A stretch of 63,946 bases of DNA, filler included, from Octopus bimaculoides (GCF_001194135.2; 5 parts of 4 records of this genome joined end to end with filler, not necessarily neighbours in it), one strand, 5' to 3'. Numbered from the whole stretch's first letter, positions 32,925 through 44,269 are shown. Program-made: numbers and translations. Notes: generated by a model not told the origin, from the sequence alone.

Positions 32925-33248
32925 GGCGTCATAGGAAGGAATTCGTCTTATAGTGCGTCCAATGAACTTTGGAGGTGGTGGTGGGCTTACAGGAGTCTTA
33001 GCAGTTGTTTGTTTAGTTGTAGCTGCTTTTTCAGGTCTCACCACGGGTCGATCAGTCAGAGCAGCCTCTGGGTTCAAATTGAGCCTCCTCGCAGTTGCTA
33101 TTGGAGATTTGGGGATGATTTTCTTCTTTTTGAAAAGGGGAGTGTTTTGAAGTGATGGTGTAGTGCGTCCTTGGAAAGACTGTAAAGTGTTCTTGGATGG
33201 CGATGAGCTGGGTGACACCTTAGGTGAAAGTTGTGGGGCTGGATCAGT
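32925..33248 (-). CDS. Unannotated gene copy A, exon 2 (partial; runs into gap): TDPAPQLSPK...RRIPSYDA
   Basis: A long polypyrimidine tract and TAG acceptor lie at 33249-33250, followed by 108 open codons. The exon differs from copy B only at two synonymous third positions. It is phase-compatible with ATG|GT at 37147. Confidence 0.75.
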
Positions 33249-35749
33249 CTAGAAAACAGGAAAAAAGAAAGAGAAAGAAATAAATGCTACAGAATAATAA
33301 CATAAAGCCACAAAATAAAATGAAATAATAAAAATCATTATTGTCATGGATTATTATGGATTTGGCAGCATTGTAATTATTTCTAATTAACTTTTTAATA
33401 TAATACCCTGTATTAATTATATTAACACTAACTATCAATATGTCAATATATCACTGTCATCAATTATTTCTTGTAAGACAGTAAAGTTTATTTACAACTA
33501 GGATGTACACATATAAGTAAATAGACGCATACACACACACAACAGATTACTTTTCAGTTTTCTCAATCAAATTCATTCACAAGACACTAGCTAAAGGTAC
33601 CATACAATGGGATTGAACTCAAGCCATGTGATTACAAAGTGAACCTCTTAATTACTCACCCATGTCTGCACCCATAAACATATTACCTTTCCTTCTATCT
33701 TTCCCACCACATATTCTTAATGTCAGGTTTTTAATATACCCTGTACTAGATATTTTAACACTATGTGTCTGTGTGTCTCACCACAATTATTTCAAGTGAG
33801 TTTTATAATACACTCTGTATCTAAAATGTTAACATTAGCATAACTATGTCTGTTTGTCTGTGTGTCTTACCACACAATTATATACAATTAAATTCTTAAT
33901 GTTCTTGCATTTTGTTACTTAACAAAAATAAAGTAAAAAAACAAAGAGGTACACATACAAGTAAATACACACATATACAGACACACACATACACGTTTTG
34001 CTTTGAAACACCAGCTGTGTAGGTTTATATAGTGTGTTCATAAATTACTAGTACAATCTGATACAATAAATTCTGGACGTTGTAAACATAATTTATGAAC
34101 AGACTGTATAACGTTGTCAAAATTTATACAGGTTAAAATAGTATGCTGGCAGAATTGTTGCTGCACTGGGAAAAAAGCTTCGTGGCATTTCTTTTGACTT
34201 TACATTCTGAGTTCAAATGCTGCCAGGGTCGATTTTACCCTTCATCCTTTCAGGGTTGATAAAATAAGTACCTACTGAACACTGGGAGTGATGTAATTGA
34301 CTTACACTCTCCCCTACAGCAGCTGACCATGTGCCAAAATTTGAATCCAGTATTTTCTTAGGATTGCTAGAACATACAGAATAAATCGAGTTCAATACAT
34401 GAGTAGATATATTTTAATTTAATTGGCAGAAGTCAGAAAAGTGACTCAAGGGTTGAGAGTTTCATACGGTTGGTATTATGGTACATATTGGAGTTGGCAG
34501 TTAGTGATTATGACGAGTGTTGCTGTTGCAGATGTGCAAGATGAACGAAGAACAGTGACCAAAGTTGTAAAGAAATATTTATTTACCATTACTTTGTATA
34601 TATCCAAAACCACGACGAGTTGGTATGTATAATTAGTAAATGGAAAAGCATGCAAGGTAAAAAAGTTAATTTTGGCCGGTATGTGTGTACACATTCTCGT
34701 AGTAGTAATCCACAGATAGAGATAGAATGAAGTTGTAAGAGAAAAGAAACTGAGCTAGCGAAAATTATAGAGTCAAGGGATGTTGTGACCTTTCTCCCTC
34801 TGGGCGTTTGTCTTTAGTGGCTGCCTGCTTGTAGCCATGACTCTAGTTGGTCTCTGTTCACTAACTGATTTTGCCTTACCGAATTCTAGTATTTATAACT
34901 ATTGAAAACTAGTCAGAAAGATAGACATATTATTGAGAACAATAAATTATCTCAATTCTAACTTTTGGTGGCCAAGAAGAGGTAAGAAGGGTCAAGTGGA
35001 AAAGACATAATTCCAGTTAGCGAAGGTATTTGGAAGTAGCTGTTCTCACTCACAGAAAAAAACTATTGTTTTACCATGAGAAAAGTGAAATTTGGAGATC
35101 AAACATCGAATCCATGCCATGCCTGCATGAAGCCACAACACACTTATCAAATTGGCCTGATAAGTACCATGCATAACACCTTTGGCCTTTCAGTCACTCT
35201 TGTAACTTCTGGCAATTACCTACCTACCTACACACATACATACACACACGTATATATAGTGAGAACTCACAAGGCTTTGATCGGCCTGAGGCTATAGTAG
35301 AAGACACTTGCCAAAGGTGCCACACAGTGGGACTGAACCTGGAGCCATGTGGTTAGGAAACAAGCTCCTTATCACACAGCCACTCCTCTGCCTATTATTT
35401 TAAAGTTTTGTTGTTTTAAGTTTTTACTATTTTGGAATGAAGAACACAAACATGTGCTGAGCCAGTGACAAAACTTGTAGTATTTTGTTGAGATTAATCC
35501 AATGAATTGACAGCAAGGTAATTGCTTCTATCAGAATCGTTTACCTTTAAAGTAAAAAAAAACAAAAAAAACAAGACCGACGTATAGGACAAGTATGTAA
35601 AATATATTTGTGTACTTCTTTCTCTGTCCATTTGGATAAGCTGTAGAAATTGTTGCACATGTGCACACACAAACACTAAAATTCTCCAGACATTTAGCTG
35701 TTATTTTTAGCATATCGAGTTTCGTGGTGAGTGCTTCACATGCCGATCT

Positions 35750-36540
35750 GGTACATTTTGGTTATCTCACCCCCATTAAAAAATTGGGTTATTCCCCCAC
35801 CGCGTTTTACGAGAAATATCAGTACTTTTGGTTATCACCTTCAACTAAAAAAAATTGCTTAACCCTCAATACAAGGGAAAAAAAAAGAAAAAAATTAATA
35901 AACATAAAAACTGAAACGATGAAACATCATTTTCAATCTGATAATATTTTCATAAGAAATCATACAAAACTGAAAAAAATGGAAGGAATTTCAACCATGT
36001 TTCGTGGTCTGCTACCACAACAGCTCCTTTATAGGATCCAGTTAGCTCAAGACATCATCAGGAGGAACTACGTCCGGTTTCGGCCCCTACTCCTCTACCG
36101 TTTTGACGTGGCGGGGCCCCTTCCTTTCGGAGGTGTCTTCAGCTCTGGTGTTGGGTGCATGTCTTCTTTCACTGTTTGTGACTGTTCTAATTCAACTGTG
36201 GAATGTCCCTCGCTATGGTTATTTTCCAGGAGGTTCTGGCCACACGTCTTACGGTTCATCAACCCGCGTTGTTGAATTACTTTCTTCTGACATACCTTCC
36301 CTTGGTGGATTAGGAAAAAACATGAAAACTGAAAGAATTAAACATTTTAATGAATCTGATGTCTTTTATAACAAATCATACAATGCCTGTCGAGGAGGCC
36401 AAACGTCAACAATGTGTTGAAGTATAGGAATCCAAAGGATCTAACTCTTTTAATCCAATCTCTTGTGGCCACATTAACTCGATTTTTTATTGGGGAGGTA
36501 ACCCCATTTTTTAATGGGAGTAAGATAACCAAAAAATACC
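35750..36540. mobile_element. 791-bp TIR element (GGTAC terminus, ~50-bp TIRs) with a GC-richer internal cargo
   Basis: ggtacattttggttatctcacccccattaaaaaattgggttattccccca matches the reverse complement of 36491-36540. No TSD was found and no transposase motif was recognised. Confidence 0.75.
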
Positions 36541-37146
36541 ACCTAGAGATTAACCGAATTTTTTTAGTAGTATGATGGCAAGTCACATCTCATGCGGCCC
36601 ACAACTCGAAAAAGGTTGTCCATGCCTGATCTACCAATTCTGCTGGCTTTTCAAAATTCTTAACTCATATACAAGGAATTTCGAAAACTTGGAATTAGTA
36701 AACAATACCATTATTCGTTTCGGTGATTTTTATCACCCCCCCTCCACACCATTATCATTATTTTTTTTAATACATTTCACTTGTTTTAGAAATTTACCAG
36801 ACTTGGTAATTTGCAAAATAAAATTCCTGACAAAGTGATCTGATAATGCACGTGTGTGTGCGTGTATGTAGTGCTGAAGTGTAGCACTTTATTTGTTTGT
36901 AACGAAGCAACTTAATTACGAATGAAATTTATGAATGGAATTCACGAGACAAAAGAAAGCGAGATTACTGAATTCTTATTGATTTAATTCGCAATTGAGT
37001 TTTAGCCTATATATATTCCATTACAGTTATATCAATATACAAATGTGAAATAATGTAGACATTAATGTCTATATGAAATAATAAAGCTCATAATCAATCG
37101 TAATAAACGAAATATCGATTTAAGATAGTCGTAAGTAATAACTTAC

Positions 37147-42739: not shown

Positions 42740-43050
42740 ATTAGAGAAAGGTCAACAGAGAAACTAGTTTTTGTGAGTGGAAGGTGCACAATTAACACTG
42801 AAAGTGTTCAGAAAATAGATTCCATCAAATGGATTCCATCAACGAGAAGAAGTTGATAGCTTCCATTACCTAGGTGACCAAGTGAGTAGTGAGGTGGATG
42901 CTCCAAGAATATAGCTAGAATAAGAATAGGTTGGGCAAAGTTCAGAGAGCTCCTACTTCTGTTGGTAACAAAGGGCCTCTCCCTGAAAATAAAAGGCAGA
43001 GTGTTTGATGCCTGTGTGCAAACAACCATGCTACACAGCAGTGAAATATG
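42740..43050 (+). mobile_element. RTE LINE fragment related to 12285-14722
   Basis: Shares blocks such as gatagcttc...taggtgaccaagt, gctgggcaaagttcagagag and aaaggcaga.tgtttgatgcctgtgtg with 14190-14390. Confidence 0.8.
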
Positions 43051-44010
43051 GATTTACAACAAATCATTGCTTTGTAAAGTATCAAACAAAATTTCTGCAT
43101 AAACTACTGGAATATCATTTGGTTGCTGAAATGTTTTGTGTCAGGTTTCATATCATCATTTCAGTAAAAGCAAAAATTTACTAATTCTTTGAAGATGGTT
43201 TAACATGTATTTTAGACGTTGACGAACCGACATAATGTTAACATGTTAGATACAGGGTGTATTATAAAGCTCACTTGAAATAATTGTGGTGAGACAGACA
43301 GACACATAGTGTTAAAATATCTAGTACAGGGTATATTAAAAACCTGACATTAAGAATATGTGGTGGGAAAGATAGAAGGAAAGGTAATATGTTTATGGGT
43401 GCAGACATGGGTGAGTAATTAAGAGGTTCACTTTGTAATCACATAGCTTGAGTTCAATCCCATTGTATGGTACCTTGAGCTAGTGTCTTGTGAATGAATT
43501 TGATTGAGAAAACTGAAAAGTAATCTGTTGTGTGTGTGTGTATGCGTCTATTTACTTATATGTGTACATCCTAGTTGTAAATAAACTTTACTGTCTTACA
43601 AGTGGTGTGGTAACAATTTGCTGCCAGTCTTCCATGAAGATATGCCTGAACAAGAGTAAACTATAACCTTACATTAAAACAGGTGTGGGGTGACAATAGG
43701 AAAAGCATCCAACTATACATGGAAAATTGGCAATAAAACAATGATGATTATAATCATGACGAATGCCAGGAACATTAAAAAGCTAACAAGAAATAATTGA
43801 TGACAGTGATATAGTGACATATTGATAGTTAGTGTTAATATAATCAATACAGGGTATTATATTAGAAAGTTAATTAGAAATAATTACAATGATGCCAGAT
43901 CCATAATAATCCATGACAATAATGATTTTTATTATTTCATTTTATTTTGTTGCTTTATGTTATTATTCTGTAGCATTTATTTCTTTCTCTTTCTTTTTCC
44001 TGTTTTCTAG

Positions 44011-44269
44011 ACTGATCCAGCCCCACAACTTTCACCTAAGGTGTCACCCAGCTCATCGCCATCCAAGAACACTTTACAGTCTTTCCAGGGACGCACTACA
44101 CCATCACTTCAAAACACTCCCCTTTTCAAAAAGAAGAAAATCATCCCCAAATCTCCAATAGCAACTGCGAGGAGGCTCAATTTGAACCCAGAGGCTGCTC
44201 TGACTGATCGACCTGTGGTGAGACCTGAAAAAGCAGCTACAACTAAACAAACAACTGCTAAGACTCCTG
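44011..44269 (+). CDS. Unannotated gene copy B, exon 2 (partial; runs into gap): TDPAPQLSPK...TTAKTP
   Basis: tttctttctctttctttttcctgttttctag| acceptor and an open phase-0 frame. The predicted peptide is identical to copy A over the overlap. Confidence 0.75.

What the first reader, a model, noticed from the sequence alone, without database searches (positions are those of the whole stretch)
32925..44269. Head-to-head inverted duplicate of an unannotated spliced gene (palindromic gene pair)
The ORF track shows only fragments, but the splice signals assemble two mirror-image genes. Copy A (-): ATG|GTAAGT at 37147, a 3898-bp intron, then AG|exon 2 at 33248. Copy B (+): ATG|GTAAGT at 39808, a 4202-bp intron, then AG|exon 2 at 44011. 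Donor and acceptor are both phase 0, giving M-TDPAPQLSPKVSPSSSPSKNTLQ... Over the 259-nt overlap the exon-2 copies differ at only two sites (CAA/CAG, CCC/CCT), both synonymous. That fits a constrained reading frame, although two sites is a small sample. I do not recognise the protein.
Basis: partly seen in the sequence, partly recalled or inferred. Interest (0 to 1): 0.82.

Follow-up and report, generated by a model that had tools for sequence, protein, structure and literature searches.

The report
Palindromic octopus gene pair kept alike
The piece holds two mirror-image, head-to-head copies of a real two-exon gene for a 294-residue basic protein of unknown function, a pair also present in two other Octopus genomes, whose coding arms are kept nearly identical by copying between them; it is real but of a well-known kind.

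Summary
All four splice coordinates are exact, and M+TDPAPQLSPK... is the N-terminus of a 294-aa protein annotated as "uncharacterized" in Octopus vulgaris and O. sinensis.

In gap-free stretches of both genomes, two genes encoding the identical protein lie head to head about 2.1 kb apart. The window is collinear with them across both of its N gaps. Both gaps are non-coding: one is in the spacer, one in an intron.

The pair is older than the species split. Promoter, 5' intron and arm-edge sequences sort by copy (46 copy-type sites against 3 species-type). The arm holding exon 2 sorts by species (27 against 0, plus shared indels) and is about 98% identical within each species. That is concerted evolution by gene conversion.

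In the window lineage a second tract of about 190 nt has also homogenised exon 1.

Coding constraint is strong. Omega is about 0.05 against O. vulgaris, and all 15 differences between copies are synonymous.

Haplotype mis-scaffolding and a high-copy transposon are both rejected. The protein matches no Pfam family or solved structure, so its function stays unknown. This is a new example of a known phenomenon, of moderate interest.

The parts
32925..33248 (-). Copy A, exon 2. These are the first 108 of 293 codons; the rest is cut off by the edge of the piece.
   Evidence: Open frame from the acceptor. 97% identical to P0006 residues 2-109. Omega about 0.05 against O. vulgaris.
33249..37146 (-). 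Copy A, intron 1 (3898 bp), with GTAAGT donor and a polypyrimidine tract plus AG acceptor.
   Evidence: Sequence. Copy-specific parts are orthologous to the O. vulgaris copy-A intron: 33620-33897, 35141-35389 and 36679-37064 match L001 5533-7239.
37147..37262 (-). Copy A, exon 1: 5' UTR ending in the start codon ATG (37149-37147). The 5' end is not mapped. The GTCGCCATGTT motif lies at 37247-37257.
   Evidence: The ATG|GTAAGT block, with 17-20 nt on each side, is invariant in all six copies of the three species. The motif is shared with the 5' UTR exon of a spliced transcript from a distant relative.
37263..39692 (.). Spacer between the two divergently oriented genes, including the 595-N gap at 38542-39136. 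The inner parts, 37263-37551 and 39411-39692, are diverged inverted homologues (77-82% identical).
   Evidence: There are 17 copy-type sites and no species-type sites upstream of exon 1. Flanks are collinear with L001 7882-9282 and 9500-10291.
39693..39808 (+). Copy B, exon 1: 5' UTR ending in ATG (39806-39808). The 5' end is not mapped. The motif lies at 39698-39708.
39809..44010 (+). Copy B, intron 1 (4202 bp as assembled), containing the 177-N gap at 40604-40780.
   Evidence: Collinear with the O. vulgaris copy-B intron: 40094-40549, 40834-41081, 41145-41595, 42374-43052 and 43052-43450 match L001 10482-19648.
44011..44269 (+). Copy B, exon 2. These are the first 86 codons; the rest is cut off by the edge of the piece.
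32990..33837 (.). Outer arm, left. It pairs with 43233-44269 at about 98% identity and is the gene-conversion domain.
   Evidence: Site patterns: 27 species-type against 0 copy-type, plus indels specific to a species but present in both its copies.
43233..44269 (.). Outer arm, right. It includes 43603-43782, which is present in copy B and in all four sister-species copies but deleted in copy A.
37122..37296 (.). Conversion tract over exon 1 specific to the window lineage. It pairs with 39659-39833.
   Evidence: Over the 192-column exon-1 island as aligned, the window copies are 97.8% identical, while the O. vulgaris copies are 85.6% and the O. sinensis copies 86.7%. Both window copies are closer to O. 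vulgaris copy A.

Best explanation
This is a genuine inverted, head-to-head duplicate of a two-exon protein-coding gene.

Gene structure. Exon 1 is a 5' UTR whose last three bases are the start codon. Exon 2 carries the other 293 codons.

Age. The duplication is older than the split between the window's species and O. vulgaris/O. sinensis.

What happened since. Promoters, 5' introns and mid-introns have diverged copy by copy, to about 80% identity, with separate transposon insertions in each copy. An arm of roughly 2 kb (exon 2, about 650 nt of intron and, in the sister species, about 410 nt of 3' flank) is repeatedly homogenised by gene conversion between the two arms. As a result the two genes encode the same protein. 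The window lineage has had one further short conversion, over exon 1.

Shown here: the structure, its conservation across species, the sorting of sites by copy or by species, and purifying selection.

Inferred: that homogenisation works through intrachromosomal gene conversion; that both copies are transcribed from their own diverged promoters; and that the protein is a nuclear, proline-directed-kinase-regulated factor. The last rests on pI 10.5, six S/T-P sites, a KKKK patch and RRLNL within the first 60 residues, and a conserved Cys/His-bearing C-terminal half.
For: - Inverted arms and exact splice coordinates.
- The only strong match to the 109-aa peptide is P0001, at E = 1.5e-46. Its cluster-mate P0006 begins MTDPAPQLSPK.
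- Two head-to-head genes for P0006 lie in N-free stretches of O. vulgaris OX597821.1 and O. sinensis CM016866.1.
- The window is collinear with both of them.
- All three species show the same mosaic: about 98% outer arms and about 81% inner arms.
- Site patterns. Arm interior: 27 species-type, 0 copy-type. Arm edge: 9 copy, 0 species. Upstream of exon 1: 17 copy, 0 species. 5' intron: 20 copy, 3 species.
- Indels shared by both copies of a species lie inside the arm.
- Omega is 0.02-0.06 between species. All 15 differences between copies (2, 8 and 5 in the three species) are synonymous.
- ATG|GTAAGT and its flanks are invariant in all six copies.
- A spliced transcript of a distant relative has a homologous 5' UTR exon joined one base before its start codon.
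Against: - No RNA evidence was available for any Octopus copy, so the junctions 37147>33248 and 39808>44011 remain untested in this species.
- Only about a third of each coding exon is visible in the window.
- The join between the copies runs through an unsequenced 595-N gap. About 620 bp next to that gap has no counterpart in the sister species.
- The protein has no recognisable domain, and the AlphaFold model was useless (pLDDT 37.6). The functional part of the statement is therefore weak.
- Exon 1 contains an upstream ATG, and so a uORF, which could lower translation from the proposed start.
Confidence: 0.85

Rival explanations
1. Assembly artefact: two haplotypes of a single locus were scaffolded next to each other in inverted order across the gaps.
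For: The join between the copies is an N gap. All four arm ends lie at contig breaks. The outer arms are about 98% identical, which could pass for allelic divergence.
Against: - The same two-copy head-to-head layout is present, without N, in two independently assembled sister genomes.
- The window's A and B contigs carry 46 copy-type sites and copy-specific indels that match copies A and B of those species respectively.
- The inner arms are only about 80% identical, and the mid-introns are unrelated.
Confidence: 0.03
2. Exon 2 and its flanks belong to a high-copy transposon or other dispersed repeat, and the splice signals are coincidental.
For: The introns are full of SINE, LINE and TIR elements. 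The contigs break inside the repeated exon.
Against: - Only two places per genome encode the protein.
- A profile search of 5.8 billion proteins finds only three clusters.
- Omega is about 0.05 and the frame stays open for 294 codons in every complete copy.
- No transposon domain is found in Pfam.
- The locus is syntenic across species.
Confidence: 0.02
3. The pair is real, but the high arm identity comes from a recent re-duplication, or from selection alone, rather than from recurrent gene conversion.
For: Arm identity alone cannot separate a young duplication from conversion.
Against: - The arm boundary and the copy-specific flanks are shared by three species, so the duplication predates their split.
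- The arm interior, intron included, nevertheless carries 27 substitutions and several indels that are specific to a species and present in both its copies.
- Selection cannot keep about 600 nt of intron 98% identical.
Confidence: 0.04
4. The pair is real, but in the window's species one or both copies are not expressed, or are broken in the part hidden by the gaps.
For: Two-thirds of each coding exon is unseen. No transcript data were available. No protein from this assembly appears in the protein cluster.
Against: Both visible portions are intact and differ only at two synonymous sites. Both copies are intact in the two sister species. Start codon, donor and acceptor are intact in both copies.
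Confidence: 0.06

Closest known systems
Uncharacterized protein LOC115215028 of Octopus sinensis and 'Hypothetical predicted protein' CAI9726463.1/CAI9726464.1 of O. vulgaris (UniRef A0AA36B340_OCTVU)
   Same: Orthologous gene pair. The arrangement is head to head and each gene has the same two exons. The proteins are 97% identical over the 108 visible residues.
   Different: The species differs: dS is about 0.2. Intron sizes differ: copy B's intron is 4.2 kb here and about 10 kb in O. vulgaris. Exon 1 is homogenised here but not there.
Sex-chromosome palindromes of primates (human Y P1-P8, X palindromes) maintained by arm-to-arm gene conversion (from my own knowledge, not tested here)
   Same: The arms are inverted repeats that carry genes. 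Arm identity within a species is far higher than identity between orthologues. The structure is conserved across species.
   Different: The scale is far smaller: arms of about 2 kb against 9 kb to 1.45 Mb. The chromosomal setting is unknown. Here the converted arm covers only the coding exon and its near flanks, while the inner parts of the original duplication have escaped conversion and diverged.
Divergently oriented duplicate genes evolving in concert, such as the Drosophila Hsp70Aa/Hsp70Ab inverted pair (from my own knowledge, not tested here)
   Same: These are head-to-head duplicates a few kb apart whose coding sequences are kept nearly identical by gene conversion.
   Different: Those genes have no introns, belong to a known family and have a known function. 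Here the start codon is split from the rest of the CDS by a 4-kb intron, and the protein is an orphan.
Argonauta hians homologue P0014 (314 aa) and an unnamed distant relative P0003 (443 aa, Logan assemblies)
   Same: Same protein family: 80% and 53% identity. The intron lies immediately upstream of the coding exon. The GTCGCCATGTT motif sits in or near the 5' UTR exon.
   Different: In both, the start codon lies in the large coding exon: its first codon in Argonauta, one base after the acceptor in the distant relative. Octopus has ACT or ACG where Argonauta has that ATG and uses an ATG at the end of exon 1. Argonauta shows no second copy within its 21-kb locus. P0003 has 164 extra N-terminal residues.

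Membership tests
Palindromic (inverted-repeat) gene pair under concerted evolution | Two inverted copies of the same gene lie close together on one chromosome. | tested here: met
   for the window. for the N-free stretches of two sister species.
Palindromic (inverted-repeat) gene pair under concerted evolution | The duplication predates a speciation event, so copy-specific characters are shared across species. | tested here: met
   46 copy-type sites and copy-specific indels at the arm edge, upstream of exon 1 and in the 5' intron. Copy-specific intron segments are orthologous.
Palindromic (inverted-repeat) gene pair under concerted evolution | Paralogues within a species are more alike than orthologues between species, in non-coding sequence as well. 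| tested here: met
   Arms are about 98% identical within a species and about 92% between species. Site patterns are 27 species-type against 0 copy-type, with shared indels in the intron part.
Palindromic (inverted-repeat) gene pair under concerted evolution | Physical continuity of the two arms in this genome. | tested here: inconclusive
   The centre is a 595-N gap. Continuity is supported only by collinearity with sister genomes.
Expressed protein-coding gene | Open reading frame under purifying selection. | tested here: met
   Omega is 0.02-0.06. All 15 differences between copies are synonymous.
Expressed protein-coding gene | Canonical, conserved splice sites and start codon. | tested here: met
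   ATG|GTAAGT and (Y)nAG are conserved in all six copies. The next Met in P0006 is at residue 132, and the frame is closed by TAG just upstream of exon 2.
Expressed protein-coding gene | Spliced transcripts across the proposed junctions. | not testable with these tools
   No Octopus transcript is held. Only a distant relative's spliced contig, L007, shows the homologous 5' UTR intron.
Transposable element or high-copy repeat | Many dispersed copies, or transposon protein domains. | tested here: not met
   Two places per genome. Three protein clusters in 5.8 billion. No Pfam hit.
Haplotig mis-scaffolding artefact | The copies differ only at allelic level and are absent as a pair from independent assemblies. 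| tested here: not met
   Inner arms are about 80% identical and the mid-introns are unrelated. The pair is present in two other assemblies.
Any named protein family (Pfam, PDB) | A significant match by sequence or fold. | tested here: not met
   Pfam finds nothing for the 109-aa peptide, P0001 or P0003. The best PDB profile match has E = 0.77. The AF2 model has pLDDT 37.6 and cannot be used for a fold search.

The most novel reading that the evidence does not exclude
An orphan gene found so far only in octopods and one unnamed relative is held as a palindromic pair in Octopus. Gene conversion is confined to the coding arm, so the two copies make one identical protein. Their promoters and 5' introns, meanwhile, have been free to diverge for longer than the species have been separate. 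This would amount to subfunctionalisation of expression with an enforced single protein sequence.

In the same lineage the start codon has moved across the intron. The ancestral ATG, the first codon of exon 2 in Argonauta, is now ACT or ACG, and a new in-phase ATG at the last three bases of exon 1 has taken over.
Probability: 0.35. Interest if true: 0.5.

Novelty: new member of a known kind. Interest (0 to 1): 0.36.

Why it matters
- It rescues a real gene pair that this gapped assembly cannot annotate, because both coding exons run into gaps.
- It gives a small, clean example of a mosaic palindrome in a cephalopod. The conversion domain has a sharp boundary conserved across species, and next to it lies sequence that has diverged by copy. 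Such a locus can be used to estimate conversion-tract limits and rates in cephalopods.
- It also documents a likely move of a start codon across an intron.
- The protein is strongly constrained and has no known domain. It is a candidate lineage-restricted nuclear factor that merits an expression and localisation study.
- None of this overturns current understanding.

Tried and rejected
- The first word-indexed protein search with the 109-aa peptide returned nothing. This was a false negative: the exhaustive HMMER search and a later profile search both found P0001.
- Pfam on the peptide and on the full-length homologues found no family.
- A PDB profile search gave only a chance hit at E = 0.77.
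- AlphaFold2 on a five-sequence alignment gave pLDDT 37.6 and pTM 0.20. I ran no fold search, because the matches would be meaningless.
- Rfam gave only sub-threshold miRNA-like hits on a TG/TA-rich stretch at 42163-42236. ARAGORN found no tRNA.
- Literature searches for LOC115215028, and for octopus with inverted duplication and gene conversion, found nothing relevant.
- I first read the 97-99% exon-1 island as selection on the 5' UTR or core promoter. I rejected this because the O. vulgaris and O. sinensis copies differ by about 14% there.
- I considered treating the arms as the long terminal inverted repeats of one large transposon. I rejected this because the whole structure is a syntenic gene pair.
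- I looked for an Argonauta partner copy within the 21-kb locus using tblastn, self-BLAST and motif searches, and found none. The 10-kb flank limit means a partner farther away is not excluded.
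Full report
**1. What is in the sequence**

The piece consists of three contigs: 32925-38541, 39137-40603 and 40781-44269. They are separated by 595 and 177 N, and the piece itself is bounded by N on both sides.

A large inverted repeat is present.
- The outer arms, 32990-33837 and 43233-44269, are about 98% identical. The one exception is a 180-nt segment (43603-43782) that copy A lacks.
- The inner arms, 36579-37551 and 39411-40397, are about 80% identical. 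Within them lies an island of 97-99% at 37122-37296 / 39659-39833.
- Between the outer and inner arms, the two sides share nothing but SINE copies.

- Copy A (-) has ATG at 37149-37147 followed by GTAAGT, and an AG acceptor before 33248.
- Copy B (+) has ATG at 39806-39808 followed by GTAAGT, and an acceptor before 44011.
- An in-frame TAG closes the frame just upstream of exon 2, and a TAA lies five codons before the exon-1 ATG.

The two exon-2 copies differ at two synonymous sites in 259 nt. On its own this is weak evidence, because the neighbouring intron is also about 98% identical.

**2. The gaps**

Neither gap touches coding sequence. One lies in the spacer between the genes, the other in copy B's intron.

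The real question is whether the order and orientation across the gaps are right, because the head-to-head layout depends on them. They are. The window is collinear, block by block and in the same orientation, with N-free stretches of O. vulgaris (L001) and O. sinensis (L002).
- Across gap 2 the interval between anchors is 284 bp in the window and 280 bp in O. vulgaris.
- Across gap 1 the anchors are 38103<->9282 and 39325<->9500.
- Window 38104-38541 and the SINE at 39137-39324 have no counterpart there. They are lineage-specific.

**3. Identity of the gene**

An exhaustive HMMER search with the 109-aa peptide found one strong match, P0001, at E = 1.5e-46.

The 90% cluster of P0001 also holds P0006, a 294-aa protein. 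P0006 is annotated in O. vulgaris ("Hypothetical predicted protein", two accessions) and in O. sinensis ("uncharacterized protein LOC115215028", two accessions).

Residues 2-294 are encoded by a single exon. The gene is therefore exon 1 (5' UTR plus ATG) and exon 2 (293 codons).

In each of the two genomes, two genes encode the identical protein and lie head to head about 2.1 kb apart.

**4. Coding constraint**

- Between the window and O. vulgaris there are 15-17 synonymous and 3 non-synonymous differences in 108 codons, giving omega of about 0.05.
- Between the two copies within a species there are 2 differences (window), 8 (O. vulgaris) and 5 (O. sinensis). All 15 are synonymous.
- The block around ATG|GTAAGT, about 17 nt upstream and 20 nt downstream, is invariant in all six copies.
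- After the initiator, the next Met in P0006 is at residue 132, beyond the conserved N-terminal region.
- Both copies are intact wherever they can be seen.

**5. Age and mode of evolution**

I aligned the six copies (A and B in each of three species) and classified the variable sites.

| Region | Copy-type sites (all A vs all B) | Species-type sites (both window copies vs all four others) |
|---|---|---|
| Inner edge of the outer arm | 9 | 0 |
| Upstream of exon 1 | 17 | 0 |
| 5' intron | 20 | 3 |
| Inside the outer arm (intron part plus exon 2) | 0 | 27 |

Copy-specific indels accompany the copy-type sites. Copy-specific intron segments, including a LINE fragment in copy B, are orthologous between species. 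The duplication is therefore older than the species split. Paralogue identity of 77-82% against orthologue identity of 85-89% suggests it is roughly 1.5-2 times older.

Inside the outer arm the pattern reverses. Several indels there are specific to a species but present in both of its copies. O. vulgaris and O. sinensis show the same mosaic: arms of 1947 nt at 97.7% and 98.5%, and inner arms at about 81%.

This is concerted evolution. The arm is repeatedly homogenised by gene conversion, up to a boundary that all three species share.

The exon-1 island in the window is a separate event specific to this lineage. The window copies are 97.8% identical there, while the O. vulgaris copies are 85.6% identical. 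Both window copies resemble copy A.

**6. Wider relatives and gene structure**

A profile search found only three clusters: the Octopus cluster, Argonauta hians P0014 (314 aa, 80% identity), and P0003 (443 aa, 53% identity), known only from unnamed Logan assemblies.

- In Argonauta the coding exon begins ttttccag|ATG GAT GCC. The start codon is thus the first codon of exon 2.
- At the aligned position Octopus has ACT (window) or ACG (O. vulgaris and O. sinensis), and it uses the ATG at the end of exon 1. The start codon appears to have moved across the intron. This is an inference from alignment.
- Contig L007 of the distant relative is a spliced transcript. An 89-nt 5' UTR exon carrying TCGCCATGTT is joined at cag|A ATG, while L006, L008 and L009 keep the intron.
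- The same motif sits in Octopus exon 1 and about 3 kb upstream of the Argonauta coding exon.
- Argonauta shows only one copy within its 21-kb locus. This suggests the duplication arose after that split, but does not prove it.

**7. The protein**

- It is very basic: pI 10.5, with 54 K+R against 16 D+E.
- The N-terminal part has six S/T-P sites, a KKKK patch and RRLNL.
- The invariant core NTPLFKKKKIIPKSPIATARRLNLNPE is largely kept in the distant relative.
- The C-terminal half has invariant Cys and His residues and ends in NIGILYNIAASLQKSS.
- Pfam, PDB and AlphaFold gave nothing usable.
- My best guess, from motif knowledge only, is a nuclear protein regulated by proline-directed kinases.

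**8. Rivals**

- Haplotype mis-scaffolding is rejected by the copy-type sites and by the two independent assemblies.
- A high-copy transposon is rejected by copy number, synteny and selection.
- A recent duplication, or selection alone, cannot explain changes that are specific to a species, shared by both its copies, and located in intron sequence.
- Still open: whether both copies are expressed and intact in the window's own species.

**9. Verdict**

The phenomenon, a palindromic gene pair evolving in concert, is well known, and the gene is already annotated as uncharacterized in sister species. Interest is moderate.

Noticed in passing
window 38439-38541 (+), at the left edge of the central gap: A dense cluster of promoter-like motifs: two copies of GCGCATGCGC (NRF1-like), GCTTCCGG and ACTTCCGC (ETS-like), AATGGCGGC (YY1-like) and TTTCGCGCC (E2F-like). 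An ATG follows, opening a frame that runs into the gap. The whole stretch 38104-38541 has no counterpart in the orthologous spacer of O. vulgaris or O. sinensis. It may be a lineage-specific insertion that carries a promoter. The motif names come from my own knowledge.
   Followed up: partly
window 41596-41982 (+), copy B intron: A 387-bp SINE with a tRNA-like head (A- and B-box-like TGGCCCAGTGGTTAGGG and GGTTTCGATTCCC). It is flanked by an 11-bp target-site duplication, ATTACTTGACA / ATTATTTGACA. O. vulgaris has the empty site, so this is a recent insertion in the window lineage. ARAGORN does not call it a tRNA.
   Followed up: yes
window 35749-36541, copy A intron: An element of about 790 bp bounded by 51-nt terminal inverted repeats that are 84% complementary (I16). 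It looks like a non-autonomous DNA transposon. Window 35390-36571 gave no listed match of 150 nt or more in the O. vulgaris or O. sinensis loci. Its 204-codon ORF has no Pfam hit.
   Followed up: partly
window 42640-43060 (+), copy B intron: A decayed retrotransposon fragment. It has a PHD-like zinc finger (Pfam PF00628, E = 3e-6) followed by a frameshifted stretch that resembles the tail of a reverse transcriptase. It is orthologous to L001 16313-16993 at 89% identity, so it predates the species split and is specific to copy B.
   Followed up: partly
window 37257-37166 (-) and 39698-39789 (+), exon 1: An upstream ATG inside the conserved GTCGCCATGTT motif opens a 29-codon uORF that ends 14 nt before the main ATG. 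The uATG is kept in all six Octopus copies and in the distant relative's transcript, but the peptide is not: in copy B of O. vulgaris and O. sinensis the uORF is only ATG TTA TGA.
   Followed up: partly
window 33470-33477 (copy A) versus 43603-43782 (copy B): A 180-nt segment is present in copy B and in all four sister-species copies but missing from copy A. The missing segment is flanked by short ACAAG repeats. This is a recent deletion in copy A that conversion has not yet erased.
   Followed up: yes
window 35265-35394, 37570-37740, 39137-39320, 40942-41116, 41373-41565: At least five copies, 72-84% alike, of one SINE family. Several of them start at a (CA)n run. They are scattered through both introns and the spacer in both orientations.
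   Followed up: no
L001 about 7240-7880 (O. vulgaris copy A, 5' intron): An insertion of about 500 bp in O. vulgaris, shorter in O. sinensis. It has inverted termini (GTACTAGTATCGTAGAGTGGTCCCGGTTTGCGC...) around a long array of TATACGATATATAC-like tandem repeats. It is absent from the window and from copy B.
   Followed up: no
method note: The word-indexed protein search missed an 89%-identical relative of the low-complexity 109-aa query. The exhaustive search then found it. A negative result from that tool on proline- and serine-rich queries should not be trusted.
   Followed up: yes
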